Below, piece after piece: positions 2,055-39,154 of a stretch of 64,000 nucleotides of DNA (the first letter of the stretch is position 1; each line of letters begins with the position of its first letter). The stretch lies in IMG/VR virus record IMGVR_UViG_3300043399_000877, positions 1 to 64,000 of that record; one strand, written 5' to 3'. The position numbers and the translations under genes were made by a program. Below the pieces are notes generated by a model. That model was not told the origin of the DNA and did not search any database. It was given only the letters and a program-made list of their open reading frames with translations.

Positions 2055-3080
2055 TTACCCAATGTTAACAAAATGATCGATAATGTGGAAGTGATCTTCA
2101 AACATAAGTTCTTGTTTCACTTCGTGGAACGGTACCCAAAATGCCTTTTCAGCATCGTCCGAACCTTTGACTTTCGGCAGTTCTTCTGCAAAACCGAGGT
2201 CGATGTAAAACGCCTGAGTAATGGTACGCCCACGTTGGCTGCGGTTCGGAGCATCGAAGGTTCGAGAATCACGGATGCTACCACGCAGCACCGGAACCGG
2301 AACCTTGATCTTAGTTTCTTCACGAAGTTCACGCAGCGCACCGTCTAGCATGGTTTCGCCTTGGTTAAGGAAGCCACCGGGCAGTGCCCAGAGTCCTTTA
2401 CCCGGCATGTCACCGCGCTTAACAAGCAGAATGTGACCGCTTTGTACAACCACAGCATCAACAGTCATGAAGGTCGGCGGGAACGGAGCAACTTTCCACG
2501 CTTCCTTGTACTTCTTAACCATATGGTATTCGTCATACAGAGTGTTGAACCATGAACCAGAAGCGAACGAATGTTGCATTTTAGTAAAAGCAATATCTGG
2601 CATGCTCTTGTAGGCTACAGAAGAATCACCTTCAAAAAGAGCGTTACGAATATCAGTTGCGTTGATACCATCAACGTTAGGAACACTCACGTTGCCCCAG
2701 CCCAGCGGCTTGAAGATTTTCAGGTAGTAGCTGCTTCCGTCTTTTTCGTGGCCAATAAGACCGATACGGATTGGATCGGCACTCCAAGCAAGTGCGCCAT
2801 GAACGACGTTCTGCACTGCGCGAACCCACTTGTTGTCGTCGTACGGGTAATCGCTGACCGGAACAACTTTAACGTTGTTGTCCGGGAACACAGATTTAAT
2901 CATCTGTCTGCGTTCTTCAAATGTAAAGGGATTTCGAATATTTCGTGAAGCAAAGCTGGAACCAACAACAATGATTACTTCTCGTGCTTGCTTGATTGCG
3001 GCATCAATGATTGCCCGGTGTCCATTGTGAAACGGCTGGAACCTGCCAATAAAGACTAGTGCGTCATATTTCATTTGCAA
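2055..3080 (-). CDS. nadM: Bifunctional NMN adenylyltransferase / Nudix ADP-ribose pyrophosphatase (NadM-Nudix, NatV-like)
   Basis: N-terminal FIGRFQPFHNGH (HxGH) and NPFTFEER; C-terminal Nudix box GGFLNQGETMLDGALRELREET. Confidence 0.95.
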   Translation of the reverse strand: MQMKYDALVFIGRFQPFHNGHRAIIDAAIKQAREVIIVVGSSFASRNIRNPFTFEERRQMIKSVFPDNNVKVVPVSDYPYDDNKWVRAVQNVVHGALAWSADPIRIGLIGHEKDGSSYYLKIFKPLGWGNVSVPNVDGINATDIRNALFEGDSSVAYKSMPDIAFTKMQHSFASGSWFNTLYDEYHMVKKYKEAWKVAPFPPTFMTVDAVVVQSGHILLVKRGDMPGKGLWALPGGFLNQGETMLDGALRELREETKIKVPVPVLRGSIRDSRTFDAPNRSQRGRTITQAFYIDLGFAEELPKVKGSDDAEKAFWVPFHEVKQELMFEDHFHIIDHFVNIG

Positions 3081-9519: not shown

Positions 9520-9795
9520 TTAGTTGTCTAGTGTTTTTTCACTTGCAGTTTTATACTTTTCCAAGTATTCGTAAACCTGCTCGTAGGTCTCAAACATTCG
9601 TGTTCCCTGTTTTGACATCACACGAACGGTGGACCCAAAACACTGTATTAGGCCAAATCCCGGATATCTTCCGTTACCCAACCGTCTAGTGTTCCATCTA
9701 TTGCGTCTAGGAACCGGGTCCCTAAACTCGTGTTCTATGTTTAATAGTTCTGCGCATCGGGCGTAGAACGCTTTCTTCTCTTCTCTCGTTTTCAT
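9520..9795 (-). CDS. Hypothetical protein
   Basis: True start MKTREEKK at 9795; the longer track ORF begins inside tRNA-Ser. Confidence 0.7.
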   Translation of the reverse strand: MKTREEKKAFYARCAELLNIEHEFRDPVPRRNRWNTRRLGNGRYPGFGLIQCFGSTVRVMSKQGTRMFETYEQVYEYLEKYKTASEKTLDN

Positions 9796-9797
9796 CT

Positions 9798-9887
9798 TGG
9801 CGGACAGGGTGGGATTCGAACCCACGGTACCCTTGCGGGTACGCTGGTTTTCAAGACCAGAGCCTTAAACCACTCGGCCACCTGTCC
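9798..9887 (-). tRNA. tRNA-Ser(TGA)
   Basis: CTGGT-CT-TGA-AA-ACCAG, long variable arm, GCCA. Confidence 0.95.
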
Positions 9888-10643
9888 TTATCTTTTATTT
9901 ATCAAATCCTCGACATAGCATCTATCAACATAATGATTAACACCAGTATCTACCGTAAAATGTGTCCTCGGTTGGTTCTTCATTATCCATAGCTCGTATG
10001 CATGCCTCTCTGATTCTGCTATTACTTTTGTGGGAGTGTAGCTGTATATATCAGTGGGTTTTGGAAGTTTACGTATGTAATCGTTCCTTGCCCACCATAC
10101 ATTTCCACTTGTTATAGTGTCCCCAGTTTCTTTAGACTGAAGATCGCGAACACAGACAACATCATGATCTACTAGATGCTTTATACATCGAGTCCATTCA
10201 GTTATTGTAAAATGGTCTAATACCTCTCGCCAATTCCACACATTGGTACTGGTACCAGTCATACCTTTGGAATGTGTATATAAAACATATCCATCGTTAT
10301 TTTGGCAGTGTTCATGCAAATAGTCTAACGTCTGTCCTTCGTAAAGATTCTTTTGACTTATGTCCCTGACTTCTAAGACTCTTATAAACGGATATCTGGC
10401 GTTAACGTAGTTGACTACTTTTTCACAAAACGGTATATTATCTCCACCGTTTTCAGGAAAAAATCCACCGCCGTATTCGTCAGTTTCCCACCACATGGGC
10501 ATGCTTACACACAAATTCAAGTCAGCTGCCTCGTGCAATCGTGCTTGTGTTATTAGACGCATTTGCGCATCAAACATCCAGTGCCAGCGTAGTCCGCGGC
10601 TATCTGGCGGAATAAACAAATGGTAAAACAATTCTATTTTCAT
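9888..10643 (-). CDS. Hypothetical protein, possible glycosyltransferase-like
   Basis: YVLYTHSKG and SGNVWWARNDYIRKLP motifs seen in phage glyco-islands; AT-rich. Confidence 0.55.
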   Translation of the reverse strand: MKIELFYHLFIPPDSRGLRWHWMFDAQMRLITQARLHEAADLNLCVSMPMWWETDEYGGGFFPENGGDNIPFCEKVVNYVNARYPFIRVLEVRDISQKNLYEGQTLDYLHEHCQNNDGYVLYTHSKGMTGTSTNVWNWREVLDHFTITEWTRCIKHLVDHDVVCVRDLQSKETGDTITSGNVWWARNDYIRKLPKPTDIYSYTPTKVIAESERHAYELWIMKNQPRTHFTVDTGVNHYVDRCYVEDLINKR

Positions 10644-10657
10644 TACGATATTTATTT

Positions 10658-10781
10658 TGGCGCCGGGCGGGGATTACTGCCTCCTGACTTCTCATCGAAG
10701 GGTCATGACCCTCTCAAAGCCATTTTCTCCATTCGCCTTTGGGTCATGACTCCCATCAGCCACACCTATGTGATACCCAGC
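10658..10781 (-). ncRNA. tRNA-like RNA with enlarged central domain
   Basis: GCTGGGT/GCCCGGC 7-bp acceptor + G + CCA, degenerate T-arm, central stem built from two GGGTCATGAC(C/T)C palindromes. Confidence 0.55.
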
Positions 10782-10862
10782 TAACTTAATTGGAAGAACA
10801 GTCTCGGAATCGGAGCAGTGCCAGCACCGCGTCCAGTGGGTCGGTAACACGAAAACTGTTCT

Positions 10863-11489
10863 TCAAGTTAAGTTTTTTAGTGCAGTTATTATCTGGTCTC
10901 TAGTCCAAATACACACATTTCGTTTTACAAACGACGGAAGAGTGTCATTTATAGAAAACACTGGATCAGGAAAATTAAATGGGTGTTTTTTAAAGTTAAG
11001 CTCTGCATAACCGCCAGTCGTTATGTTTACATTTTCTGCAGGAGTATCGTGGCAGGTAGTAAACAGAAGTGGCGTACCACTTCTTAAAAAATTATTTAAC
11101 GTTGCATATATGTCTTTGAAAGACATATGAAACATGCAATCTCTACAAAGCATCATATCTGCTTGCGGTAACGGGTCAACTGTTATATCCATAACTCTAA
11201 GATCCAGGTTTGGAAACTTAGCCCGGTTTTTTTCTATCAAAAAATCAACTACGTCGGCACCGATATACTTTATATCAAGGGTGTCAACTAATGTTCCCAT
11301 CCACGTAAGGTCACCACATCCAGCATCAAAAAGTGTTTTTACATTAAACTGCTCGATTATGCCGGGAAAGGCTGATCTTAATTGTTCTGTGTACCATAAA
11401 GAAGATCCGGGACCACTCAAAGGTGTATCACCCTGTCCGCCCCATTCTTCATTTTTGTATATTTTTGAAAATATTTCTTTATTGCTCAT
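10863..11489 (-). CDS. Class I SAM-dependent methyltransferase
   Basis: SGPGS, LFDAGCGD, YIGADVV, DMMLCRDC motifs. Confidence 0.85.
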   Translation of the reverse strand: MSNKEIFSKIYKNEEWGGQGDTPLSGPGSSLWYTEQLRSAFPGIIEQFNVKTLFDAGCGDLTWMGTLVDTLDIKYIGADVVDFLIEKNRAKFPNLDLRVMDITVDPLPQADMMLCRDCMFHMSFKDIYATLNNFLRSGTPLLFTTCHDTPAENVNITTGGYAELNFKKHPFNFPDPVFSINDTLPSFVKRNVCIWTRDQIITALKNLT

Positions 11490-11508
11490 ACAATATTTAG
11501 TCGTTTTT

Positions 11509-12520
11509 GCATAGCTTGAGATTACAGCATGCTTCGAGTGCCTTTCTGGAGTACCACCGGCCTTGCGAGCCGTGTTGCCAGTTTATCCACTAAAGCCAGT
11601 TACGGTCATTCAGTATCACTCATGGTCGCCTTGTTGAGGAGTGGCATTTCTCCTGTCGCACGTTGCTATTCGTCCATCAATCCTTCGCCTGCCTTGCGAG
11701 CAGTTCACTTCCGCTAAGAAGTTACGCTATCTTTCCGAACAACTACATCAGCCTTGCGAGCATCCGTAGACCACATTCTCTTTCGAGTGTGGTATTAGAC
11801 CACTTTCACAACGTACCGGGACAGTCTTTCGCTTTTGAGTCAATAGTAGGACTTGAACCTACAGTCGACGGTTCCATAAAACCGTTGCATTACCATTATG
11901 CAATATTGCGAACCTACTTCGATGTGCTGTCCCAGTTGCACCATGTCTTGTTAGACACAGTATACAACACACCGACTGTCTTTCAGCTTGCGGCTTACTC
12001 AACCTTACTTCACGAGTCCGGGGCCTAACCCTTCTTCGCTTGTAATGCTACCTAGCCTTTGCTTGCGGGCTCAGACAGTGTAGCTACCTGTTGATATTCA
12101 GCACTCGTTAGTTTGGCTGAAAGCTGTTCGGGCGCCAACCCTCTTACCACTCACCGACTGGCTCTGTGGCTATCCTTTCGGACAACTCTCCTAACTTAAT
12201 GCCTACCGCCATTCTACTGACGGGACTTGCTTTCGCGTCATTGCGAGTCAAGTCTAATCCAGGCTTGTATGAACGAACCATTGCTGGTGCCAGTTTATAG
12301 GAAACCTGGCCTTGGGTGTGTTACCACACTTATTCTAGTGACGTCATACCGCCAATCTTTAACACAAAGCCCACGTTTCACAACGTTAACTTTGCGAGTC
12401 TCTGTTTTTAACTGTACCCCAAAACGTTGCCAATTGACTGGCTGGTTATACCTTGTTGGGTAGGATACGGATAAACTCCGTTTTTTGCCACATACAGTTA
12501 AAAACAGAGCGTTTACTCTG
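11509..12520 (-). ncRNA. Large structured ncRNA, GOLLD-like candidate
   Basis: ~1 kb with no credible minus-strand ORF, many GNRA-capped hairpins (GCTCGCAAGGC three times, CCGAAAGG, CTCGAAAG), perfect 17-bp stem 12400-12416/12493-12509, embedded tRNA-like domain, own promoter + boxA. Family identity not confirmed by a covariance search. Confidence 0.6.
11839..11910 (-). tRNA. Degenerate tRNA-His-like element embedded in the large ncRNA
   Basis: D-arm GCAT-AATGGTA-ATGC, ACGGT/ACCGT stem with 8-nt loop TTTATGGA, T-arm GTAGG-TTCAAGT-CCTAC; weak acceptor, no CCA. Confidence 0.6.
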
Positions 12521-12524
12521 TTTG

Positions 12525-12542
12525 CTAAATTTTCAAAGAGCG
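12525..12542 (-). promoter_or_regulatory. rrn-type boxA antitermination element
   Basis: CGCTCTTTGAAAATTTAG vs E. coli rrn boxA TGCTCTTTAACAATTTA, ~25 nt after the promoter. Confidence 0.7.
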
Positions 12543-12568
12543 TGTAACTACTGTTACGTTATGTTGTT

Positions 12569-12596
12569 AATATAGCAGCTAGTGCAGCAATGTCAA
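12569..12596 (-). promoter_or_regulatory. Sigma70-type promoter for the large ncRNA
   Basis: GTTGTTGACA-N16-TATATTAACAAC; nearly identical flanks at 12755-12782. Confidence 0.75.
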
Positions 12597-12754
12597 CAAC
12601 TATTTTGGTCTTGTTGCGGACTGTGTTTTTCTTTGCACAAAAATGTAAGGAACAGTCTTTGCAACGTCGTTTTAGTATACCGCGCAGTGTGTTTTTTCAT
12701 CCAAAGAAAGTATTTTAAGGAACACTGTTTGCGGCGTCGTTTTGTCGTGTTGTT

Positions 12755-12782
12755 AATATAGCAGCTCTTGCAAGTTTGTCAA
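12755..12782 (-). promoter_or_regulatory. Sigma70-type promoter driving hairpin units 3-4
   Basis: GTTGTTGACA-N16-TATATTAACAAC. Confidence 0.75.
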
Positions 12783-12791
12783 CAACTAAAT

Positions 12792-12875
12792 TGGTACACA
12801 CATCGTCTGCAGAATTGAACTGCGATCAGTCCCTATAGGACTAGCACGACCTTTGTGCTATGAACGATGTGCGTA
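12792..12875 (-). ncRNA. tRNA-like RNA with 12-bp acceptor-like stem and ACCA end
   Basis: TACGCACATCGT/ACGATGTGTGTA-CCA, T-arm GCAG-TTCAATT-CTGC, two internal hairpins AGCAC/GTGCT and GTCC/GGAC. Confidence 0.65.
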
Positions 12876-13020
12876 TAATTTAACTTGCGGCGTGTGTTTT
12901 GCTGATTTAAAGGTCAATTATTAAGGAACACGCTATGCAAGTATTGTGTAACCGGGCCGCGGATTGTGAGTTTTTTCCAAATAAAAATATAAGGAACAAT
13001 CTGTGCGGCCCGGTATTCTG

Positions 13021-14757
13021 TTAGTTCAGCAGCAGGTTTTCCAACCGGTCGTAGCTGAAGCTGCCGTAGCTGAGATCGTGATCGTATTCTACACCGTCTG
13101 CGCGATCCAAGTCGTAGCTGATGCCGGCGGCATCCAACAGTTGGCTCACAGTCCAGAAACGGCTGGTACCACGAGCAACAACAGCAGTTGACTTGTTGTC
13201 CACACTCCAACGGTTATCGTTGAGACGACCCTGGTAGACAGTGAAGGTGTTGTTGTTGACAAAACCGATCACATTACCGCGGCTATCCAGCGAACCCTTT
13301 TCGCGAATTACGACGTCCTCAATCCAACGATCCTTGCCGTCACGACCCACGACCAGTTCAAACCCAGCACCGTTGTTACCACTGAAGATGTTAACAAACA
13401 GGCCGTATTCGACACCGGTACTGGTCATGAATTCCATAGCACCGTTGCGAGCGCTGGTCATATCACCACTGAAGGTAACCGGATTGCTCTTGCTGTAACC
13501 ACTCCATGCACCCCAACCAGTACGATGACCGCTGCGGTCAATAGTGCTGAGATCGAGGTCATGTGCGCCCCAGTCGTCTTGCCAGTAAACACCGGCGCTG
13601 ATACGTCCACCACTCACGGTGATGTTGGTACCGTAGGGCAGGTTACCCAGTGCTTGCTTGCGGCTGATCGGAAGACCGTAATCAACAGTGCTATCCAGCA
13701 AAATACGCTTGCCCTGAAGACCAGCAAGATCGCGGCGGAGGCTAGCAACAATCATGTCACGGACACGATTCAGTCCAGCAGTATCACGAACCGCGCGGCC
13801 TGTTTCAAGATGCACTTTACCGTTGCGAACAATAAATGCGTCGGTATCCTGACCGGTGTGCTTGTACTCGATCAAGTTCAGGATCTTGAAGCGGTCACGA
13901 AGGCTAACCTTCTCAAGCGCCGTCTGGTCTGCACGACCAGCCAGTGCCAGTGCAAGGAACCGCTTGCCGATCGGTTCGTGAACCGGGACATGGTTGCGCT
14001 TGCTGAGTCGGGTGATACGGTTAATCACGTTACGATTGACAGCTCGCTTTGCAGCAAGGATCAACGGCTTGTGGCGGTTGAACACCTGTGCCAGCGGCAT
14101 TTCGTGTGCTTCTAGAAACTTGGTAGTAATCTGGCTGCAAACTTTGATGCTGTCAATAACCTGACGGCTCTTGATCAGCAGGGTTTTTCCGGTTGCAACC
14201 TTCACCATATAACGAACAGCGTCGTCACCGTTGTTGAAACGGTCGCGATTGGGATTGAACAGTTCAACCCGCAGTTCGTTATTACGAATCTGGTTTACAT
14301 CGTAGTCGATGTTGAAGTCCTGGATGATCTGACGAACAAGATCAGAATCTTTAACCGGAGCATTTGCATAAATCAGTGCGCGAACACGATCAGCAAGTTG
14401 CTCAACAGTGATACCCTGAACATAGGTCATAACCATAACCTGGCCTTCTTCAACTTCCAGGTCAAACAGGCCCGGACGATTGAGACCGTAAACTTCCACG
14501 TAGTGGAGCAGTTGCTTGGTCACCAGCTGAACAAGGCTGGCAGTATCACGCTCAACACGCCCGAAAAGGGTGCGAATAGCGAGCGGACTGCGGGTTGCCA
14601 TCAACACAGCCCTATGAACCGAGTTGGGTTCAAAGTCGGTGACAACAGCCAGTTTTTCAACCAACGAAGTGTTAACCACGCCGGTCGTCGCTCCGGGTTC
14701 TACAACCAGAGCATTGAACAGTTTAAGAACGTTTGCTTGTGCAGTCTGATTGTACAT
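13021..14757 (-). CDS. Conserved large-phage protein, helical N-terminal region with TerD-like C-terminal domain
   Basis: Start MYNQ at 14757 (RBS AAGGAG); C-terminal GVYW...HDLDLS...TGW...VTFSGDMTSARNGAMEF resembles TerD-family motifs; GC-richer codon usage typical of highly expressed genes. Confidence 0.6.
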   Translation of the reverse strand: MYNQTAQANVLKLFNALVVEPGATTGVVNTSLVEKLAVVTDFEPNSVHRAVLMATRSPLAIRTLFGRVERDTASLVQLVTKQLLHYVEVYGLNRPGLFDLEVEEGQVMVMTYVQGITVEQLADRVRALIYANAPVKDSDLVRQIIQDFNIDYDVNQIRNNELRVELFNPNRDRFNNGDDAVRYMVKVATGKTLLIKSRQVIDSIKVCSQITTKFLEAHEMPLAQVFNRHKPLILAAKRAVNRNVINRITRLSKRNHVPVHEPIGKRFLALALAGRADQTALEKVSLRDRFKILNLIEYKHTGQDTDAFIVRNGKVHLETGRAVRDTAGLNRVRDMIVASLRRDLAGLQGKRILLDSTVDYGLPISRKQALGNLPYGTNITVSGGRISAGVYWQDDWGAHDLDLSTIDRSGHRTGWGAWSGYSKSNPVTFSGDMTSARNGAMEFMTSTGVEYGLFVNIFSGNNGAGFELVVGRDGKDRWIEDVVIREKGSLDSRGNVIGFVNNNTFTVYQGRLNDNRWSVDNKSTAVVARGTSRFWTVSQLLDAAGISYDLDRADGVEYDHDLSYGSFSYDRLENLLLN

Positions 14758-14831
14758 CGTTGTCTCCTTTGTATGCACACTTTATAACAGTTGTCGCGTG
14801 TTGCGTCAAGTGTTATTTTGAAGTCTTTATT

Positions 14832-15227
14832 TTAGTCTTTATGGTGTTGCCAAAGTTTGTCTGAACCACCTAGGTGACCCCAGTCAGAGTCGACAACCAT
14901 TTTTGAACTAATACCGCCGCGCGGGCGGAAAGTAATTTCAAGACGAATACGAAATGGATCGTAGGCTTCCATCAAATGCTTATACATCACGTCTGTAGCC
15001 CTCTCGTATGAAATTACGGTATCTCGATATTGTATCAGATACTCTTTGAGAGATTTTAGTTCAATTGTTTTTTCTTTACCATGAAACCAAATCTTGATAT
15101 GTCCAAAGTCTGGTTGGTTTTTCACCCCAAGAAATGTAAATTCCGGAATATCAATCTGTTGTTCATATCCAGCGGCAGCATTTGGTAAAGATTTTAGTGT
15201 ATTTTCAATTGTATTCCAAAGTTTCAT
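14832..15227 (-). CDS. queF: QueF-like T-fold protein (catalytic Cys replaced)
   Basis: PEFTFLGVKNQPDFG, ELKSLKEY QueF motif, ISYE, FRPRGGISS. Confidence 0.75.
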   Translation of the reverse strand: MKLWNTIENTLKSLPNAAAGYEQQIDIPEFTFLGVKNQPDFGHIKIWFHGKEKTIELKSLKEYLIQYRDTVISYERATDVMYKHLMEAYDPFRIRLEITFRPRGGISSKMVVDSDWGHLGGSDKLWQHHKD

Positions 15228-15802
15228 TACTGCTCCGTTTTGTTATTGAGTCTTTGTTTGAGTCTTTTCTTATAAGTTTCTGTATTGCAATAAGGCTCAA
15301 TAGCCGCAATTACCGCAGTTTCAACATCGCTGATGGTTTTTGGATCATCTGACATGTTCCAAACCAATACCGGAATATCGGAAATTTTAATCAGCGGTTG
15401 ATACTGATGTTCTGTTATTACAGGTTCTACTCGACGGCGTCCAACCGTCTTATAGTATTCCGGATACTCTGGCATGTCTGAATAAATGAATCGGGCGACA
15501 CCTTCGCGCCATCCCTGAGGTGTTTCAATCCTGGGTTGCACTTTGGGTTTCAAGGGCCCGTACAACTCAGCGGGATTTGCTCTCAACTTACTACCATGGT
15601 TTTTATAAAACCTTCCAAAAACTGTCGCCGTTGGCGAGTGACACTTACCAAAGTAAAAATTCACTTCAGGATAAATGTAATAGAGTCCGCGATGCACACC
15701 GTGCAGGCCTGCTTCGAGGGATCCTACAGTAGATTCATAAGGACGTTGTTTACGTCCAGTGAATCGTTCAACGAGATTGATAATTGTGTCTACGTGTTGC
15801 AT
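15227..15802 (-). CDS. Hypothetical protein (GIY-YIG-like)
   Basis: GLYYIY...FYFGK...ETAVIAAIEPYCN. Confidence 0.55.
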   Translation of the reverse strand: MQHVDTIINLVERFTGRKQRPYESTVGSLEAGLHGVHRGLYYIYPEVNFYFGKCHSPTATVFGRFYKNHGSKLRANPAELYGPLKPKVQPRIETPQGWREGVARFIYSDMPEYPEYYKTVGRRRVEPVITEHQYQPLIKISDIPVLVWNMSDDPKTISDVETAVIAAIEPYCNTETYKKRLKQRLNNKTEQ

Positions 15803-15846
15803 TTTGCTAATCTAGCAGTGCCGTCAGCAAATGTCAACAAGTTTTA

Positions 15847-15922
15847 TGGTGCTGCTAGACGGGTTCGAACCGCCGACCTGATGATTACTAATCAACTGCT
15901 CTACCAGCTGAGCTACAGCAGC
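15847..15922 (-). tRNA. tRNA-Thr(AGT)
   Basis: GCTGCTG...TTGA-TT-AGT-AA-TCA, Thr-type body, ACCA. Confidence 0.88.
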
Positions 15923-15927
15923 GTTAT

Positions 15928-16002
15928 TGGAGCGGGCGATGGGATTCGAACCCACGACCTGAGGCTTGGCAAGCCGCCGCTCTACCCCTGAGCTACGCCC
16001 GC
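15928..16002 (-). tRNA. tRNA-Gly(GCC)
   Basis: GCGGGCG...TT-GCC-AA, U73 discriminator + CCA. Confidence 0.93.
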
Positions 16003-16613
16003 ATATTTTTATTTAGTTCTCTCATTTTCATCAACGTCTTTTTTGGACCGCCAGATGAGTGTAAATGAATTATGTTTTTGCTATAGTCTATACCAGTAAA
16101 TTTTTCATATATCGGAGCCTGTTGAACAATATCAGTAATTGCCTTTCCTGAACGATACATGCTAATATAGATATCTTGTTCATAATCATACTTGTTATAA
16201 TTCCATTTACTGACATGCTCAAAAACCTGGTCCCATATGCTACTATCCATATCATGCGGGAAATATCTTACTCCACAGTTATGTCTACAACCAGCCACAA
16301 AATCTTCATTAAAAACCTGTGTAGGTTTTATACACAGTGTGTCTGGATCGGTATAAAGTATGTTGCATTTTTCATTTTTCCATATTTTATACGTTTTCTC
16401 GAGAGTAAAAATAAAAGATTCTTGGAGAGTGTCTTTAGTACCGGTTAAATGTATTAGAGACCACTCTCCGAGAAGGTTTTCTTTAAAAGAGCTTATACTT
16501 AACTTTTGCATTTTTTTATAATCTTTGTAATTAGTTAAACCAAAAACAAAATCATCAAAAACGGCTGTTTCACCAGGAATTTCATATGTGCTCTTTAACA
16601 TGTAGTTTTTCAT
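15993..16613 (-). CDS. Putative GT-A glycosyltransferase-like protein
   Basis: ILYTDPDTL (DxD), IIHLHSS; very AT-rich. Confidence 0.55.
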   Translation of the reverse strand: MKNYMLKSTYEIPGETAVFDDFVFGLTNYKDYKKMQKLSISSFKENLLGEWSLIHLTGTKDTLQESFIFTLEKTYKIWKNEKCNILYTDPDTLCIKPTQVFNEDFVAGCRHNCGVRYFPHDMDSSIWDQVFEHVSKWNYNKYDYEQDIYISMYRSGKAITDIVQQAPIYEKFTGIDYSKNIIHLHSSGGPKKTLMKMRELNKNMRA

Positions 16614-16616
16614 ATT

Positions 16617-16838
16617 TTATTTATCTATATCCAACACGTCTAATTCTTGACCGCCAAGAGTCAGTAAAAACAGTGTGTTTTTATTGTCAGGATACAGATA
16701 TATAATGTATTCATTGCCCGTTCTTTCAAACGGGCCATGCCGTAGGCGATACCTTTTTATAAGGTTCTGGACTGTTCTAAGACTGTGATATGGAACTTTA
16801 ATTCTCATATAGGTCATCATAGTCATCAATCTCGTCAA
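16617..16838 (-). CDS. Hypothetical protein
   Basis: Small ORF, start uncertain. Confidence 0.55.
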   Translation of the reverse strand: MTRLMTMMTYMRIKVPYHSLRTVQNLIKRYRLRHGPFERTGNEYIIYLYPDNKNTLFLLTLGGQELDVLDIDK

Positions 16839-17331
16839 GCCAATCGTCTCCGGTCAGTGCCGATCGATCGTACTGCTTGTAGTAATCCTCGTTTGGTTTA
16901 AGGATTCTCACATCTGGTATTTGCATTTGCAGAATCAAAAAATGCCGCATGCTTGGAATATCGGTGATATACCAAGTCGTCCCACATCCGCCACCTGCCA
17001 GTTTTATGGCGCCGTGTGCCATGTTGGCGACGGCAGTTCTAAGTTTACTACCGTATTCGGTAATAACCCTCACTGTTTGACTTTTGACATATGCTGCATG
17101 ATCCTCGGCCGTTGCAGGCCTAATTGTTGCGCAATTATCGTCGTCGATTGTTACTGTACAATCTCGGACTTTAATTGCTCCCTTGGTGTGTGCGTTATCC
17201 GGCGTCTCTTTTGTACTCCACGGAACCGAGCAGTCCACATGGTTTACATAAAAGGTTTCCCCTCGCAATTTAAGCACCCACATCGGGATAGTTGCATCTT
17301 CCAGATGTTTTTTGTTGAAGTGGAAAACCAC
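16798..17331 (-). CDS. Hypothetical phage protein
   Basis: VFHFNKKHLED.TIPMWVLK...YVNHV conserved phage-type N-terminus. Confidence 0.75.
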   Translation of the reverse strand: MVFHFNKKHLEDATIPMWVLKLRGETFYVNHVDCSVPWSTKETPDNAHTKGAIKVRDCTVTIDDDNCATIRPATAEDHAAYVKSQTVRVITEYGSKLRTAVANMAHGAIKLAGGGCGTTWYITDIPSMRHFLILQMQIPDVRILKPNEDYYKQYDRSALTGDDWLDEIDDYDDLYEN

Positions 17332-17687
17332 GTCTCTACAAGGTATAGCAATCTACGACATTTCTTTCTCCTTTTGTCATATATGGTGACAGCCTAACAG
17401 TCGATCTTAATGGGTATTAGCACTGGCAGGTTCCCATTTCCTGCATCTCTTCGCTTTCGCTACTTTACCGTTTCTGGTGTGTGAGGCGGGTGTTCTCACC
17501 TCAGTGCCGCAGGGTTTCTGGTTTGCTGTCTCTACTACAAACCCTTTTTCGAATTGGCGACCACTGTTAGCCGCTGTTGCGACCCCCAACACGTTGTCCT
17601 GCCCCATCGGGGGCCTTGGCGTGTTTTTGTATTGGGATTTAGCATCCAAGTATCCAATCGCGACAGTGGGGGCGCATGGATACTGAT

Positions 17688-17762
17688 TGGCGCGTGTGGA
17701 GGGACTCGAACCCACAACTGTACGCTTTAGAGGCGTCTGCTCTACCATTGAGCTACACATGC
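17688..17762 (-). tRNA. Amber suppressor-type tRNA (anticodon CTA)
   Basis: GCATGTGTAGCTCAATGGTAGAGC-AGACGC-CT-CTA-AA-GCGT...GTGGGTTCGAGTCCCTC-CACACGC-G-CCA. Confidence 0.85.
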
Positions 17763-18095
17763 ATTATCTTGTAAGGCAAGTTCTTAAACCCGTGATACAG
17801 GTTCGGCTTGCCCGCCCGTGGTTTTCACACCACGGACTTGACCACTGAGTTATCAGCCCCATTTTTATACACCCTGGGTCTAAAGCAGGGTGTTTTACAA
17901 CACCGGTCCTATGCCGGTGAGCCGCAGCCGGACCGGCGGACTATTACCCCCTGCCCTCCCGAAACTATATTCCGGTACATTGAGCGGCGTTGTAAAAGTG
18001 GAGTTGGCAAGGGTTCCGACCCCTACTTTAGTTGCAACCTACGCCTGCCCGGCGATCCTAGCTGCAACTGACAATCCGTGTCAATCCAACATAAT

Positions 18096-18172
18096 TGGTC
18101 TGTCTGAGAGGACTCGAACCTCCGACCTATGGTACCCAAAACCATCGCACTACCAGGCTGTGCTACAGACAG
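18096..18172 (-). tRNA. tRNA-Pro(TGG)
   Basis: ATGGT-TT-TGG-GT-ACCAT, C1-G72, ACCA. Confidence 0.93.
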
Positions 18173-18190
18173 TCTATATAATTATCCATG

Positions 18191-18871
18191 TCAACAATTT
18201 TTTGTAACTTTAAAAAACAATTGCATTTCGTTGTCTTTTAAAACTTGTATATCACCTGATATAGTGTACATATCTAACAAATTCCTCAAGTAAGGAACAT
18301 CTGCGTCGTCAAATAACACTACGTCATTGGGAGCGGCTAAATCTATCACATTGGAGATATCTGCATTAGCATCATGCACAGTATGTGATCCATCAATTAC
18401 CCATCCAATTTTTTTGTTTCTAATTTCTGGATAAAAATTAAAAATATTTGGTAACACATTTTTTGAGTCGCCAATTCTTAATTCAATTCTATCGCCATAG
18501 ATCTGTTTTAGGTAATTGAAGCACGGAACTGTATATCTGTGAATGCCAACATCTATGCCCACATAGTTCAAAGATTTATTTGCAGTTAGGGCCAACATGG
18601 CGCTGTGTCCACCGTTAAATCCAATTTCAACCACAACATCACATACAGATGCAAACATTGCATAAAGTTTACGTTTATCAGAAAAACCTTTATGTAATGA
18701 TGATCTATCTTTTTCTAGATCATAATAAAAAATATTTCCTTCTAAAGGTTCTTTTGTTTTTGATATTGTTTTGTTTAACCCATGTAGTATTTTTTTATAC
18801 TCTTGATAAAAAACTTCTTCATGGTTACATTGTTCATTTAACAGATGGCGTATTTCATTATTAATAATCAT
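18191..18871 (-). CDS. Class I SAM-dependent methyltransferase (Methyltransf_24-like)
   Basis: VEIGFNGGHS, GIDVG, GDS, VIDGSH, LFDD; AT-rich. Confidence 0.8.
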   Translation of the reverse strand: MIINNEIRHLLNEQCNHEEVFYQEYKKILHGLNKTISKTKEPLEGNIFYYDLEKDRSSLHKGFSDKRKLYAMFASVCDVVVEIGFNGGHSAMLALTANKSLNYVGIDVGIHRYTVPCFNYLKQIYGDRIELRIGDSKNVLPNIFNFYPEIRNKKIGWVIDGSHTVHDANADISNVIDLAAPNDVVLFDDADVPYLRNLLDMYTISGDIQVLKDNEMQLFFKVTKNC

Positions 18872-18889
18872 TTAAAATTCCATAGTAAG

Positions 18890-18961
18890 AAGGATATTTG
18901 GATTCGAACCAAAATCACATGAATCTAAATCATGCCACTCTATCCACTTGAGTTATATCCT
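18890..18961 (-). tRNA. Atypical short-arm tRNA with TAG anticodon (possible pseudo-tRNA)
   Basis: AGGATAT/ATATCCT acceptor, D-loop AGTGGATA, CATGA-TT-TAG-AT-TCATG, short variable loop, no CCA. Confidence 0.6.
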
Positions 18962-18991
18962 GTCACTATGTATTTACGCAGATTATATAAA

Positions 18992-19066
18992 TGGCTGGGG
19001 ATGGAGGGGTCGAACCTCCGTATGTCGGGACCAAAGCCCGATGCCTTACCACTTGGCTAATCCCCA
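18992..19066 (-). tRNA. tRNA-Gln(TTG)
   Basis: TGGGGAT...TCGGG-CT-TTG-GT-CCCGA, GCCA. Confidence 0.95.
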
Positions 19067-19073
19067 AGAATTT

Positions 19074-19265
19074 TTATCGACGGTTCTCTACTACGTCTTT
19101 GACAGTCTCTAATACTGCATCCAAGCTAGTAAGCACCAGCTTTGCACTTTGCCAATCTTCTTGATCATCTTGTCCGCTGTATTCAACAACGAACCCGTTA
19201 TCGGCGAAGCTGATGCTAATATCAGTAACTCCGCTGACGATTTCATTCTTACTACGTTTCCCCAT
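19074..19265 (-). CDS. Hypothetical protein
   Basis: 63-aa ORF with AGAGGA RBS, between tRNAs. Confidence 0.7.
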   Translation of the reverse strand: MGKRSKNEIVSGVTDISISFADNGFVVEYSGQDDQEDWQSAKLVLTSLDAVLETVKDVVENRR

Positions 19266-19280
19266 ATTTTCCTCTTGTTA

Positions 19281-19365
19281 TGGTGCGGGTGGAGGGACTT
19301 GAACCCCCACGCCTTGCGGCGCTTGAACCTAAATCAAGTGTGTCTGCCAATTCCACCACACCCGC
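19281..19365 (-). tRNA. tRNA-Leu(TAG)
   Basis: CTTGA-TT-TAG-GT-TCAAG, long variable arm, ACCA. Confidence 0.95.
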
Positions 19366-19371
19366 GTTCTA

Positions 19372-19569
19372 TTATTGCTTAACACTAACACCCATTGGCG
19401 TATCTGTCAAGTATCTTAATACCAAGTTAGCAACACCAACCGCCAGTAATACAAGTGGGGTATACTGTGGTGCTATTATGTTGATCAAGTCAACATATTG
19501 TGCAAGACCTGCTATGATCACTGCAACGTTAAATAAAGTTGTTCTCCAACCTTTTAAAAAGTTCTTCAT
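19372..19569 (-). CDS. Small two-TM membrane protein (holin-like)
   Basis: MKNFLKGWRTTLFN..., two hydrophobic segments, GGAGG RBS. Confidence 0.55.
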   Translation of the reverse strand: MKNFLKGWRTTLFNVAVIIAGLAQYVDLINIIAPQYTPLVLLAVGVANLVLRYLTDTPMGVSVKQ

Positions 19570-19598
19570 TTCGATGCCTCCCGTGTGCATCGTATTTA

Positions 19599-19674
19599 TG
19601 GAGGCGCGTCGGGGAGTTTAACCACCGTCCTTGGCCCTTGCACAGGCCACGCATTAACCCTTTGCTAACGCGCC
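19599..19674 (-). tRNA. Atypical tRNA-Cys(GCA)-like
   Basis: GGCGCGT/ACGCGCC-T-CCA as in bacterial tRNA-Cys, but 8-nt anticodon loop TGTGCAAG and bulged T-arm with TTAAACT loop. Confidence 0.7.
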
Positions 19675-19780
19675 ACTGTTTAGAAGATAACAGCAGGGTA
19701 CGCAAACTCCCTGAAGGGCCCACTTCAAAGCGAACTCAATCACCCAAGCCCCGGCTGTGTACTGTTATCTTCTAAATAGT

Positions 19781-19863
19781 TGGTACCCGCGGCCGGACTC
19801 GAACCGGCACACCTGTGGCGGGAGATTTTAAGTCTCCTGTGTCTACCGTTCCACCACGCGGGC
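19781..19863 (-). tRNA. tRNA-Leu(TAA)
   Basis: GGAGA-CT-TAA-AA-TCTCC, long variable arm, ACCA. Confidence 0.95.
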
Positions 19864-19867
19864 ATAT

Positions 19868-19944
19868 TGGTGCTCCCACAGGGACTCGAACCCCGAACCT
19901 GCAGATTATGAGTCTGTCGCTCTAACCAATTGAGCTATAAGAGC
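19868..19944 (-). tRNA. tRNA with CAT anticodon (Ile2 or elongator Met)
   Basis: ACAGA-CT-CAT-AA-TCTG, non-initiator body, ACCA. Confidence 0.9.
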
Positions 19945-19951
19945 AGTATAA

Positions 19952-20027
19952 TGGTGCCGCCACGAGGGCTTGAACCCCGGACATCCTGATTACAAATCAG
20001 GCGCTCTACCAGCTGAGCTATGACGGC
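19952..20027 (-). tRNA. tRNA-Thr(TGT)
   Basis: CCTGA-TT-TGT-AA-TCAGG, ACCA. Confidence 0.95.
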
Positions 20028-20036
20028 TTAAGAAAC

Positions 20037-20111
20037 TGGAGCGGGTAGCCGGCATCGAACCGGTCCTCATCAGCTTGGAAGGCTGAGGCACATCCCCTAT
20101 ACCATACCCGC
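20037..20111 (-). tRNA. tRNA-Gly(TCC)
   Basis: TCAGC-CT-TCC-AA-GCTGA, TCCA. Confidence 0.95.
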
Positions 20112-20279
20112 AGTTCGAGGGGTAAGCCGGTCGCTAGCAATTACCCTCGTTAAACACCTTCACGGCTCGAATGTTCCGTGCAAGGGACGCCTAAAAATGC
20201 ATAAGTGGCGGGGAGCGTATTTGACACTGTAGTAGTGTCCTTGCCGGCCATATCCCTCTTATCTAACTGCCACTTATCT

Positions 20280-20354
20280 TGGCACCGGTGGAAGGAATCG
20301 AACCCTCTACGCGCGGTTTTGGAGACCGCCGCTCTACCACTGAGCTACACCGAT
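20280..20354 (-). tRNA. tRNA-Trp(CCA)
   Basis: GCGGT-CT-CCA-AA-ACCGC, G73, CCA. Confidence 0.95.
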
Positions 20355-20355
20355 A

Positions 20356-20544
20356 TTATTCTGATGGTGCTGTTGATGTCACCGAGTCTGTTATTTGTGG
20401 GTCAACTGTTGTTGACTCTTCTGTCGTGTAGTTAACATAATTAACTGTTACGAACTCCACAACCGTATCGTAAAACACTGCAAATGCTGCCAAAAACGCA
20501 GCAGCCAAAGTGCTGATTATTTTTCCTTTGTGTTGTGCTAACAT
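20356..20544 (-). CDS. Small membrane-anchored hypothetical protein
   Basis: Start MLAQHKG (GGAG RBS), one TM segment, S/T-rich tail. Confidence 0.6.
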   Translation of the reverse strand: MLAQHKGKIISTLAAAFLAAFAVFYDTVVEFVTVNYVNYTTEESTTVDPQITDSVTSTAPSE

Positions 20545-20587
20545 TATATCTCCTTGTATTTTATCTGGAGTATTTAGCATTTAAATT

Positions 20588-20663
20588 TGGTGGACCCTAC
20601 CGGTTTCGAACCGGTCGCCTCCTGCTTGCAAGGCAGGCGCTCTCCCAACTGAGCTAAGAGCCC
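20588..20663 (-). tRNA. tRNA-Ala(TGC)
   Basis: GGGCTCT with G3-U70, CCTGC-CT-TGC-AA-GCAGG, ACCA. Confidence 0.95.
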
Positions 20664-20758
20664 GAAATTCCGCTGGTTCTCACGTTTTGAACCGAATGTT
20701 GTCCGGAATTTCGACCACTGTTCGATAGGCAAGCTATCTTGGTACCCGGATCAAACTC

Positions 20759-20848
20759 TGGCGGAACGTACAGGATTCGAACCTGTGGGCCCCTTTCGGG
20801 GCCGATGGTTTAGCAAACCACTGGTTTAAGCCACTCACCCAACGCTCC
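20759..20848 (-). tRNA. tRNA-Ser(GCT)
   Basis: TGGT-TT-GCT-AA-ACCA, long variable arm, GCCA. Confidence 0.95.
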
Positions 20849-20855
20849 AGTATCT

Positions 20856-20932
20856 TGGTTGCGGGGACAGGATTTGAACCTGTGACCTCTTGGTTATGAG
20901 CCAAGCGAGCTACCGGACTGCTCTACCCCGCA
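20856..20932 (-). tRNA. tRNA-Met(CAT), initiator-like body
   Basis: GCGGGGTAGAGCAGTCCGGTAGCTCG fMet-type D-arm, CTTGG-CT-CAT-AA-CCAAG, AACCA. Confidence 0.9.
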
Positions 20933-21033
20933 AAAATCGTGTATACAATGGAGTACCGAGTGCTGATAGCGAATCAACTTCCTAGTAATTTGCGTGTTAA
21001 GAATGTCTCTACTCTAACACAACCATCGTATTT

Positions 21034-21109
21034 TGGCTCCCTGACCAGGGCTCGAACCTGGGACCCGCTGATTAACAGTCAGCTGCTCTACCTACTGAGC
21101 TATCAGGAA
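21034..21109 (-). tRNA. tRNA-Asn(GTT)
   Basis: GCTGA-CT-GTT-AA-TCAGC, GCCA. Confidence 0.95.
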
Positions 21110-21114
21110 ATATA

Positions 21115-21580: not shown

Positions 21581-21582
21581 TT

Positions 21583-21600
21583 CCAAATTTTTAAAGAGCG
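21583..21600 (-). promoter_or_regulatory. rrn-type boxA antitermination element
   Basis: CGCTCTTTAAAAATTTGG, in a leader homologous to 12525-12570. Confidence 0.7.
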
Positions 21601-39148: not shown

Positions 39149-39154
39149 ATGTTA

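What the first reader, a model, noticed from the sequence alone, without database searches (positions are those of the whole stretch)
11509..12520. ~1-kb GOLLD-like giant ncRNA in an alphaproteobacterial phage
Seen: a kilobase with no credible coding frame on the transcribed strand, dense in GNRA-tetraloop hairpins (GCTCGCAAGGC three times), with a perfect 17-bp helix (12400-12416/12493-12509), a dedicated promoter and boxA, and an internal tRNA-like insert. Established: GOLLD RNAs are large phage-associated RNAs of unknown function found near tRNA clusters, sometimes with a tRNA inside. The segment GTGTGTTGTA..CTGT.TCTAACAAG...GCAACTGG.ACAGCACATC and the 3' GTAATCTCA resemble GOLLD as I recall it; this is not verified.
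Basis: partly seen in the sequence, partly recalled or inferred. Interest (0 to 1): 0.72.

Follow-up and report, generated by a model that had tools for sequence, protein, structure and literature searches.

The report
GOLLD giant RNA in a megaphage

Summary
Confirmed. Window 11513-11975 (minus strand) matches Rfam GOLLD (RF02032) over the whole model at 187.4 bits (gathering 150, E 3.5e-51). Upstream, 11976-12354 is a 379-nt 5' domain shared with about 20 viral contigs. 73 of its 91 predicted pairs show compensatory changes. The GOLLD proper is therefore 842 nt (12354 to 11513), with a tRNA-like insert (11837-11910) in the variable linker. All of these are published GOLLD features.

In four public RNA libraries, contigs pile up on 11504-12384 only. 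Depth there is up to about 300,000, against 0-41 on the flanking genes.

The leader (promoter, small hairpin, boxA-like CGCUCUUUGAAAA) has one paralogue in the 382-kb genome, at the head of the main tRNA array. Similar leaders precede GOLLD in relatives. This suggests rRNA-operon-style antiterminated synthesis followed by processing.

The alphaproteobacterial host is plausible but unproven. It rests on an alpha-type tmRNA and on the nearest cultured matches being roseophages that also carry GOLLD.

Verdict: a new member of a known kind, of modest interest.

The parts
12755..12782 (-). Upstream copy of the promoter (TTGACA-16-TATATT with TG extension). It forms a tandem pair with the proximal promoter 186 nt downstream.
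   Evidence: 11 of 12 matches. family D2: 57-nt direct repeat 12553-12609 / 12739-12795, 79% identical.
12569..12596 (-). Proximal sigma-70-type promoter of the GOLLD transcription unit. The predicted start is near 12562.
   Evidence: It is paralogous to the promoter at the head of the tRNA array at about 21637-21664. Function is inferred, not shown.
12544..12557 (-). Small hairpin (GUAAC-AGUA-GUUAC) between promoter and boxA, in the position of boxB in rrn leaders.
   Evidence: Fold. The paralogous leader has GUAGC-GCAA-GCUAC at the same place. A hairpin precedes boxA in L080, L024 and L079.
12530..12542 (-). boxA-like element CGCUCUUUGAAAA.
   Evidence: the pattern CGCTCTTTRAAAA occurs only twice in the 381,886-bp genome, here and at 21588-21600 at the head of the tRNA array. 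The same motif lies upstream on the same strand in 9 of 19 relatives. E. coli rrn boxA is U-GCUCUUUA-ACA, and position 9 may be G, as in Aquifex (PMC3177189).
12400..12509 (-). Leader module: a perfect 17-bp helix (12493-12509 with 12400-12416) closing a 76-nt three-hairpin junction. It is a likely processing stem and is absent from the stable RNA.
   Evidence: z -5.8. The same architecture with different sequence occurs before GOLLD in L080 and L092 and in this phage's tRNA-array leader. RNA contigs stop at 12382-12384.
12364..12396 (-). Small hairpin with a GUGA loop between the long stem and GOLLD P1. The apparent 5' end of the stable RNA falls here or just upstream.
   Evidence: Fold. Contig ends at 12382 (followed by adapter), 12384 and about 12382 in three runs.
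11976..12354 (-). GOLLD 5' domain (379 nt).
   Evidence: Alignment A1 with 18 relatives. RNAalifold gives 91 pairs, 73 with compensatory changes. 96% of cells are canonical, against 33-42% when partners are slid. It contains an invariant GUCCGAAAGGAUA hairpin (GAAA loop).
11914..11975 (-).
   Evidence: Alignment.
11837..11910 (-). tRNA-like insert in the variable linker (J13/15). It has an 8-nt anticodon loop UUUAUGGA, and the two outermost acceptor pairs are mismatched.
   Evidence: 14 of 19 distinct relatives carry a homologous tRNA at the same site. A natural variant in run X8 lacks one base at 11876, giving a canonical 7-nt loop with anticodon UAG.
11513..11836 (-). GOLLD conserved 3' domain, ending in the GUAAUCUCA hairpin.
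   Evidence: model positions about 110-416. Subfamily alignment.
11751..11761 (-). First GCUCGCAAGGC hairpin (Rfam consensus ggcuCGCAAggcc).
11691..11701 (-). Second GCUCGCAAGGC hairpin, equivalent by my inferred mapping to the conserved loop L21b. Just upstream (11708-11723) is the L21a-like hairpin with loop UUAGCG.
   Evidence: the stem covaries and the loop GC is kept in 18 of 21 rows. Published roles of L21a and L21b: PMC12286853, PMC12990946. The mapping onto L21a/L21b is my inference from model positions, not from a structural alignment.
11560..11570 (-). Third GCUCGCAAGGC hairpin, an extension of the penultimate helix of the 3' domain.
   Evidence: CUCGCAAGG is conserved in 20 of 21 rows.

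Best explanation
The locus is a GOLLD RNA gene on the minus strand of a 382-kb phage. Shown: an 842-nt RNA (12354 to 11513) with the family's conserved 3' domain and a covariation-supported 379-nt 5' domain. A tRNA-like element is nested in the linker between the two domains. The gene sits among phage tRNA genes. The RNA is present in environmental RNA libraries at depths orders of magnitude above the neighbouring genes. Inferred: transcription starts near 12562 from one or two strong sigma-70 promoters. The nascent RNA carries a small hairpin and a boxA-like element, as in rRNA operons. By analogy, these would recruit host NusB/NusE and shield this long untranslated transcript from Rho termination. 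No minus-strand terminator is predicted before about 8700, downstream of five more tRNA genes, so the transcript may run that far. A long-stem leader module (12400-12509) is then cut away, giving a mature 5' end near 12384-12400. By homology to GOLLD env-38 and the S. agalactiae GOLLD, whose cryo-EM structures are published, the mature RNA most likely self-assembles into a closed homo-oligomeric RNA cage. The linker and its tRNA moiety would face the interior. It probably acts in the phage's takeover of translation, alongside its 42 tRNAs and its tmRNA. The biological function of any GOLLD is still unknown, so this last step is the weakest.
For: Family identity: Rfam GOLLD at 187.4 bits versus gathering 150, full model, E 3.5e-51, and it is the only copy in the genome. 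15 relatives with the same 5' domain also pass (159-213 bits).

5' domain: 73 of 91 pairs compensatory, 96% canonical versus 33-42% in slid controls.

Expression and ends: RNA-library contigs cover 11504-12384 only. In X8 the depth is 62,000-325,000 there, against 0 on the leader and about 41 on the 585-aa gene. In X9 and X17 the flanking genes from 10048 to 14900 are at zero; only the tRNA-Ser gene at the stretch's low end also has depth. An adapter-terminated contig ends at 12382.

Leader: the boxA-like motif occurs twice in 382 kb. Both copies lie in an 85-90-nt paralogous promoter-hairpin-boxA block at the head of a stable-RNA unit. The motif lies upstream on the same strand in 9 of 19 relatives and never downstream. 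Promoter-hairpin-boxA lies directly before GOLLD in L080, L024 and L079, and promoter and boxA-like motif likewise in L092 and L102, where I did not check for the hairpin. Long-stem modules recur with different sequences.

Transcription unit: the first minus-strand terminator-like sites are at 8703-8651.

Cage: L21a- and L21b-like hairpins and the three CGCAAG loops are conserved in the subfamily. Published structures and linker tRNAs: PMC12286853, PMC12990946.
Against: No experiment on this RNA exists. Oligomerisation is inferred from homologues whose 5' domains differ in sequence; env-38's 5' domain is not alignable by eye. Stoichiometry varies among GOLLDs, from 8 to 14 (PMC12990946).

The read evidence comes from assembled contigs, which break at strain-variable junctions and have no strand. 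The depths sum related variants, and 'a hole proves nothing'. One contig in X3 continues 150 nt beyond the 3' end into unlike sequence.

boxA function, Nus recruitment and processing by RNase III or RNase P are analogies. The simple pattern count for boxA within the window alone is not above chance (2 mismatches allowed).

The window's nested tRNA has an 8-nt anticodon loop and two mismatched terminal acceptor pairs, so it may not be a working tRNA.
Confidence: 0.9

Rival explanations
1. The functional RNA is the whole stretch of about 1.05 kb from the promoter to 11513. On this view the 17-bp helix module is a lineage-specific extra domain of the mature GOLLD.
For: The leader is strongly structured (z -4.9 and -5.8). 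Long-stem modules recur directly before GOLLD in L080, L092 and L024, so they could be an accessory domain.
Against: Most relatives lack it and have tRNA genes or a bare boxA leader instead. In three RNA runs the contigs stop at 12382-12384, one with adapter sequence directly after. Depth over 12484-12657 is 0 in the three true metatranscriptomes. The same module also precedes the tRNA array, which fits a processing signal better than a GOLLD domain.
Confidence: 0.08
2. The main role of the GOLLD here is as carrier of the nested tRNA. It would be a precursor or 'inhibited storage' scaffold that keeps the tRNA inside the cage, unprocessed, until it is released late in infection.
For: A homologous tRNA occupies the same linker site in 14 of 19 distinct relatives, nearly all with canonical 7-nt loops, U33 and a purine at 37. 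L015 and L090 differ at 5 of 7 anticodon-loop positions but at 1 position elsewhere. This suggests selection acts on what the tRNA decodes. Two contigs in X17 end exactly at 11911, one base 5' of the tRNA. The storage idea is published for a Mycolicibacterium GOLLD with tRNA-Phe (PMC12990946).
Against: Many GOLLDs, including env-38 and L102, L053, L035 and L094 here, have no tRNA in the linker. The window's own copy has an 8-nt loop and a weakened acceptor stem. Contig ends at 11911 can equally be assembly breaks where co-occurring strains carry different inserts.
Confidence: 0.2
3. The cage acts as a decoy or container for host macromolecules (ribosomes, defence nucleases, stress proteins) and has no direct role in tRNA supply.
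For: The published cages have large empty interiors, and ribosome pull-down has been reported (PMC12286853). The very high RNA abundance fits a stoichiometric binder.
Against: No conserved protein-coding neighbour was found in 20 relatives that could point to a partner. Nothing in the sequence tests this idea.
Confidence: 0.15
4. The region is protein-coding, or a decayed non-functional relic.
For: Plus-strand ORFs of 121, 78 and 62 aa overlap it. The nested tRNA looks damaged.
Against: None of the five ORFs scanned has a Pfam hit above the gathering score. Substitutions among relatives are compensatory in helices, with indels of any length. There is a full-length Rfam hit and extreme RNA abundance.
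Confidence: 0.01

Closest known systems
GOLLD RNA (Rfam RF02032; Weinberg et al. 2009; cryo-EM of env-38 in PMC12286853)
   Same: The 3' domain matches the full model above the gathering score. There is a structured 5' domain of about 380 nt and a variable linker with a nested tRNA. The gene lies in a phage among tRNA genes. Total length is 842 nt (env-38 is 833 nt). L21a- and L21b-like hairpins and a conserved GAAA hairpin in the 5' domain are present.
   Different: The 5' domain belongs to a sequence subtype found in about 20 of the 119 pattern-selected viral loci and is not obviously alignable to env-38. It has a dedicated promoter-hairpin-boxA leader and a long-stem leader module. Its nested tRNA has an 8-nt anticodon loop.
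Unannotated GOLLD copies in cultured phages: Phaeobacter phage MD18, Roseobacter phage DSS3P8, Stenotrophomonas phage CM1
   Same: All pass Rfam GOLLD (169.6, 150.7 and 217.8 bits) and sit in tRNA arrays. MD18's annotated tRNA-Arg lies inside its GOLLD. MD18 and DSS3P8 also carry an alpha-type tmRNA, as this window does.
   Different: Nucleotide identity is only about 70% over part of the RNA. In the roseophages the tmRNA follows GOLLD within about 200 nt, whereas here it is 27 kb away.
rRNA-operon leaders (tandem promoters, boxB-boxA, RNase III processing stems; NusB/NusE antitermination)
   Same: The order promoter(s), hairpin, boxA-like core GCUCUUUG, then a long perfect helix is the same. 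It sits upstream of a long untranslated structured RNA and, in the paralogue, of a tRNA array.
   Different: No rRNA is involved. The long helix encloses a small 76-nt element and does not enclose the mature RNA. Binding of Nus factors and RNase III cleavage are untested.
ROOL RNA
   Same: It is also a large phage or prophage RNA near tRNA islands that forms an RNA-only cage.
   Different: There is no Rfam ROOL match anywhere in the window. ROOL has an unrelated sequence and fold.

Membership tests
GOLLD (RF02032) | Covariance-model score at or above the curated gathering score over the conserved 3' region | tested here: met
   187.4 bits versus 150, E 3.5e-51, model 1-416 of 416, not truncated (repeated).
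GOLLD (RF02032) | A structured, less conserved 5' region of about 400 nt preceding the 3' region | tested here: met
   The 379-nt domain is aligned with 18 relatives. 73 of 91 pairs are compensatory, and 96% are canonical versus 33-42% in slid controls.
GOLLD (RF02032) | Variable linker between the domains, sometimes holding a tRNA | tested here: met
   tRNA-like insert at 11837-11910. The same site is occupied in 14 of 19 distinct relatives. The feature is described in PMC12286853 and PMC12990946.
GOLLD (RF02032) | Encoded in phages or prophages next to tRNA arrays | tested here: met
   The source is a 381,886-bp virus record. There are 24 tRNA calls in the window, on both sides of the RNA.
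GOLLD (RF02032) | Loops that make the intermolecular bridges (L21a with a self-complementary GC or CG, conserved L21b) | tested here: inconclusive
   Two adjacent hairpins sit at the expected place. One has loop UUAGCG with a covarying stem and GC kept in 18 of 21 rows, and the other is GCUCGCAAGGC. The mapping to env-38 numbering is my inference.
GOLLD (RF02032) | Self-assembly into a closed homo-oligomeric cage | not testable with these tools
   This needs mass photometry or cryo-EM of the transcript.
GOLLD (RF02032) | Abundant transcript during phage growth | tested here: met
   Contigs from four RNA libraries cover 11504-12384 at depths far above the flanking genes. Timing within infection cannot be tested.
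ROOL | Match to the Rfam ROOL model | tested here: not met
   No match at the gathering threshold over the whole window, nor at E up to 1 over 10600-21700.
rrn-type antitermination leader (boxA / NusB-NusE) | boxA core GCUCUUUA-like sequence shortly downstream of the promoter, preceded by a hairpin | tested here: met
   GCUCUUUG lies at 12534-12541, about 20 nt after the predicted start, with a hairpin at 12544-12557. There are only two copies in the genome, both in paralogous leaders. It recurs in relatives.
rrn-type antitermination leader (boxA / NusB-NusE) | Binding of NusB/NusE and resistance to Rho termination | not testable with these tools
   This needs binding assays or nusB/boxA mutants in the (unknown) host.
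tRNA (nested insert) | Cloverleaf scoring above the Rfam tRNA gathering score | tested here: met
   46.1 bits versus 29, model 3-68.
tRNA (nested insert) | 7-nt anticodon loop and a fully paired 7-bp acceptor stem | tested here: not met
   The loop is 8 nt, UUUAUGGA. Pairs 1-72 and 2-71 are C.C and G.A, read. Relatives and a natural variant have 7-nt loops.
YrlA / Y RNA-like (considered for the long-stem cloverleaf leader module) | Match to the Rfam YrlA model | tested here: not met
   There is no hit on 12400-12509 or 21332-21462 at E up to 1.

The most novel reading that the evidence does not exclude
In this clade of large phages, GOLLD genes may be built like miniature rRNA operons: tandem strong promoters, a boxB-like hairpin, boxA, and a long processing stem capped by a cloverleaf. 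On this reading the RNA is made by Nus-dependent antiterminated transcription and then trimmed. The linker would hold a conserved 'tRNA slot' whose anticodon loop is swapped between lineages (CUU, UCU, UAG, GAU, UUU, CUA, UCA, and two 8-nt loops). That would make the cage a storage or timed-release vehicle for a decoding tRNA. The recurrent long-stem cloverleaf leader module would be an undescribed processing or regulatory RNA motif.
Probability: 0.25. Interest if true: 0.6.

Novelty: new member of a known kind. Interest (0 to 1): 0.33.

Why it matters
GOLLD is one of the largest bacterial or phage non-coding RNAs. It is known to build RNA-only cages, yet its function is unknown.

This copy adds little to the family as such, because GOLLD is already known from phages next to tRNA arrays and with nested tRNAs. 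Cultured roseophages and Stenotrophomonas jumbo phages also turn out to carry unannotated copies.

Three things are useful. First, there are data consistent with very high abundance and a trimmed 5' end in natural communities. Second, a conserved rRNA-like promoter-hairpin-boxA leader gives a concrete, testable idea of how such a long untranslated RNA escapes Rho. Third, a set of about 20 alignable relatives shows rapid anticodon-loop turnover in the nested tRNA, which bears on the proposed tRNA storage role of the cage.

Tried and rejected
- Megablast of the region against 50,697 phage records found no match. Only the distant mode found relatives.
- A search for relatives through the upstream 585-aa protein found none.
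- Conserved protein neighbours of GOLLD were sought in 20 relatives. No family is shared by more than 4 loci, and none sits at a fixed position, so there is no partner-protein lead.
- I looked for a 'specifier' site in the GOLLD body that covaries with the nested tRNA's anticodon. The best columns are just invariant AGG or part of a known helix. Rejected.
- The leader long-stem cloverleaf was tested as YrlA, tRNA or any other Rfam family. Nothing matched at E up to 1.
- TAG recoding was considered because of the CTA-anticodon tRNA. Reading through TAG lengthens ORFs less than reading through TGA or TAA, so there is no sign of recoding.
- Five ORFs inside the region were scanned as genes. No Pfam match reached the gathering score.
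- The intergenic stretch 10644-10862 was folded as a structured sRNA. The fold is not better than shuffles (z -0.65).
- My first promoter pattern had the wrong spacer and is not used.
- The published GOLLD alignment covers only the 3' end, so it could not be used to test the 5' domain.
Full report
WHAT IS THERE. The window is the first 64 kb of a 381,886-bp virus record that CheckV rates as complete. The record has 41.9% G+C and 42 tRNA calls. A scan of the whole window against Rfam 15 at gathering thresholds gives one large-RNA hit. It is GOLLD (RF02032) at 11975 to 11513 on the minus strand: 187.4 bits against a gathering score of 150, E 3.5e-51, all 416 model positions, not truncated. It is the only GOLLD in the genome. 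Nothing matches ROOL or any other large RNA.

THE OBSERVATION. Every item checks out.
- GCTCGCAAGGC occurs three times, all inside the region, with none expected by chance.
- The 17-nt perfect inverted repeat 12400-12416 / 12493-12509 is present.
- A TTGACA-16-TATATT promoter with a TG extension lies at 12596-12569, with a second copy 186 nt upstream.
- The boxA-like CGCTCTTTGAAAA is at 12530-12542.
- A tRNA-like insert lies at 11837-11910.
- The few ORFs in the region are short, and the five scanned have no Pfam hit above the gathering score.

THE 5' HALF AND THE TRUE EXTENT. Rfam models only the conserved 3' half. To test the rest, I scanned IMG/VR for the two 3' motifs (GTGGATAA, 30-60 nt, GTAATCTCA). 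This returned 119 loci.

nhmmer with the window's RNA finds about 20 of them alignable over nearly the full length. Many lie on contigs of 250-465 kb. Fifteen of the sixteen I scanned pass the GOLLD gathering score (159-213 bits) and sit in dense tRNA arrays. The sixteenth, L091, is only a weak nhmmer relative.

In most relatives the similarity starts at window position about 12361. Only L092, L102 and L045 show any similarity further upstream. An alignment of 12371-11976 with 18 relatives (A1) folds into 91 consensus pairs, and 73 of these have compensatory double changes. In my control, 96% of the pair cells are canonical, against 33-42% when the 3' partners are slid by 1-3 columns.

The first pair is at 12354. 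The GOLLD proper is therefore 12354 to 11513, or 842 nt. That is close to the 833-nt env-38 RNA solved by cryo-EM, whose construct also begins with a similar AUGGCCGCUAUGG... first hairpin. A profile of this 5' domain detects only about 20 of the 119 loci. This agrees with the published statement that the 5' region is the less conserved one (PMC12286853).

EXPRESSION. Near-identical sequence is held by 20 public runs from freshwater, wastewater, retting and aquaculture samples, including six labelled metatranscriptomic. I laid the contigs of four RNA libraries on 9700-14900. The contigs stack on 11504-12384.
- In X8, the summed word depth is 62,000-325,000 in the bins from 11440 to 12309. It falls to 116 in 12310-12483 and to 0 from 12484 to 13179, and is about 41 on the 585-aa gene.
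- In X9 and X17, everything from 10048 to 14900 outside the RNA is at zero. The only other depth is on the tRNA-Ser gene at the low end of the stretch.
- X3 has one 1,047-nt contig over 11504-12382 with Nextera adapter sequence directly after 12382.
- A 99%-identical contig in X9 ends at 12384, and one in X17 reaches about 12382.

There are caveats. These are contigs, so they have no strand and they break where co-occurring strains differ. The depths sum related variants, and the tool warns that holes prove nothing. Even so, uneven coverage of this size cannot be contaminating DNA. Three studies agree that the abundant species stops short of the 17-bp helix.

THE LEADER. The stretch from the promoter to boxA has one paralogue in the genome, at 21690-21580. 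That copy lies at the head of the leader of the main tRNA array.

The two copies share GTTGTTGACA, TAT(A/G)TTAACAACATAACGTAACA, a small hairpin, and ACACGCTCTTT(G/A)AAAATTT. The pattern CGCTCTTTRAAAA occurs nowhere else in 382 kb. The core GCUCUUUG matches the E. coli rrn boxA core GCUCUUUA. Position 9 is G in Aquifex and is judged tolerant (PMC3177189).

In 9 of 19 distinct relatives, GCTCTTTGA lies upstream of GOLLD on the same strand, and it never lies downstream. The opposite strand has two hits, both in one locus. Roughly 1.4 hits per strand would be expected by chance. In L080, L024 and L079 the order promoter, hairpin, boxA directly precedes GOLLD. L092 and L102 have the promoter and the boxA-like motif at the same place, but I did not check them for the hairpin.

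The same architecture, with unrelated arm sequences, precedes GOLLD in two relatives: L080 (25-nt arms, 76 nt between) and L092 (20-nt arms, 81 nt between). It also occurs in this phage's own tRNA-array leader, with 21-nt arms, 85 nt between them and a T-arm-like GGGUUCGAAUCCCGG. It matches no Rfam family.

No minus-strand terminator is predicted between GOLLD and 8703-8651, which lies beyond a methyltransferase-like ORF, a 251-aa ORF and five tRNA genes.

I read this as an rRNA-operon-like arrangement: antiterminated transcription of a long, mostly untranslated unit, followed by removal of the leader at or near the long stem. Only the sequence features and the contig boundaries are shown. Nus binding and the nuclease are inferred. 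The paper library holds no paper that links GOLLD with antitermination.

THE NESTED tRNA. ARAGORN finds a tRNA at the same linker position in 14 of the 19 distinct relatives. The inserts are homologous to each other, with shared flanks, D-arms and T-arms. Their anticodons differ: CUU four times, UCU three times, UAG twice, and GAU, UUU, CUA and UCA once each, plus one 8-nt loop. Nearly all have U33 and a purine at position 37. L015 and L090 differ at 5 of 7 loop positions but at only one position elsewhere.

The window's copy has an 8-nt loop (UUUAUGGA), and its two outermost acceptor pairs are mismatched. A natural variant in X8 lacks one base at 11876, which gives UUUAGGA (anticodon UAG), as in L092. 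The window's insert may therefore be impaired, or it may read differently.

tRNAs in the GOLLD linker, facing the cage interior, are already described, and an 'inhibited storage' role has been proposed (PMC12286853, PMC12990946). I found no site in the GOLLD body that covaries with the anticodon.

LIKELY MECHANISM. By homology, the mature RNA should form a closed homo-oligomer. The subfamily keeps two adjacent hairpins where env-38 has L21a and L21b. One has a covarying stem and loop UUAGCG, with the self-complementary GC kept in 18 of 21 rows. The other is the invariant GCUCGCAAGGC. It also keeps an invariant GAAA hairpin in the 5' domain. Published GOLLDs form cages of 8 to 14 subunits, depending on such elements. 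What the cage does is unknown for every GOLLD. I rank a role in the phage's translation takeover, including handling of the nested tRNA, first, and a decoy or container role second.

HOST. The window carries a two-piece tmRNA that scores best as alpha_tmRNA (109.6 bits). The nearest cultured-phage matches of both the GOLLD and the tmRNA are phages of Phaeobacter, Ruegeria, Rhodobacter and Brevundimonas. MD18 and DSS3P8 carry an unannotated GOLLD followed by an alpha-type tmRNA. Against this, the NrdA protein is closest to jumbo phages of Gammaproteobacteria, at 57-63% identity. An alphaproteobacterial host is plausible but not shown.

VERDICT. This is a new member of a known family, so a specialist would not be surprised. 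The rRNA-like leader, the evidence for trimming and very high abundance, and the anticodon turnover in the nested tRNA are modest but testable additions.

Noticed in passing
window 38814-39200 (-): A two-piece (permuted) tmRNA that scores best as alpha_tmRNA (109.6 bits). ARAGORN did not call it. Cultured roseophages MD18 and DSS3P8 have the same kind of tmRNA about 200 nt after their GOLLD.
   Followed up: partly
window 21110-21650 (-), especially 21332-21462: The leader of the main tRNA array is about 470 nt long and strongly structured (z -6.8). It starts with the paralogous promoter-hairpin-boxA block. It also contains a 21-bp helix closing a cloverleaf with a T-arm-like GGGUUCGAAUCCCGG. 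The same long-stem cloverleaf design occurs in the GOLLD leader, and a comparable long-stem module precedes GOLLD in L080 and L092. No Rfam family matches, so it may be an undescribed processing or regulatory motif.
   Followed up: partly
window 12610-13020: There are four copies of a roughly 60-nt imperfect hairpin repeat (TAAGGAAC... arms, families D1/D3/D5) between and upstream of the two promoter copies. On the plus strand they end in T runs and look like terminators facing the GOLLD unit.
   Followed up: no
window 12800-12869 (-): A tRNA-like element is called only by ARAGORN (anticodon ATA, short anticodon loop). It does not reach the Rfam tRNA threshold and lies just upstream of the distal promoter copy.
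   Followed up: no
window 10662-10770: In run X3 only, a 109-nt contig with adapter sequence at both ends has depth 2,510, higher than GOLLD in that run. It lies in the gap between the 251-aa ORF and the methyltransferase-like ORF. The fold of the gap is not better than shuffles. It may be a small RNA or an artefact.
   Followed up: partly
window 17688-17762 (-): A tRNA with anticodon CUA (amber suppressor type). Whole-genome ORF lengths give no sign that TAG is recoded.
   Followed up: partly
window 17418-17509 (-): A skipping-rope RNA (RF02924, 51.2 bits versus 36.7) lies inside the tRNA region.
   Followed up: no
window 19599-19674 (-) and 18889-18962 (-): There are two odd tRNA calls. One has a 2-base 'anticodon' by ARAGORN (Rfam tRNA 41.2 bits). 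The other is a 74-nt tRNA with anticodon UAG that lacks the long variable arm expected of bacterial tRNA-Leu.
   Followed up: no
L015 and L090, nested tRNAs (L015:783-853, L090:908-978): The two nested tRNAs are nearly identical except in the anticodon loop (CUCUUAA versus UUUAGAU, 5 of 7 positions). This is a focused anticodon-loop replacement on a constant tRNA body.
   Followed up: partly
L123 (Phaeobacter phage MD18 22146-25102), L124 (Roseobacter phage DSS3P8), L125 (Stenotrophomonas phage CM1): These GenBank records of cultured phages contain GOLLD RNAs above the Rfam threshold that are not annotated. In MD18 the annotated tRNA-Arg lies inside the GOLLD, and a 'hypothetical protein' CDS starts 8 nt after its 3' end on the opposite strand.
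   Followed up: yes
window 61345-63999 (-), 41619-45105 (-), 2055-3080 (-): An 884-aa ORF with a sigma-70 region 1.1 domain, class I ribonucleotide reductase subunits (NrdA/NrdB), and a cytidylyltransferase-NUDIX fusion. NrdA is closest to 320-370-kb jumbo phages of Gammaproteobacteria.
   Followed up: partly
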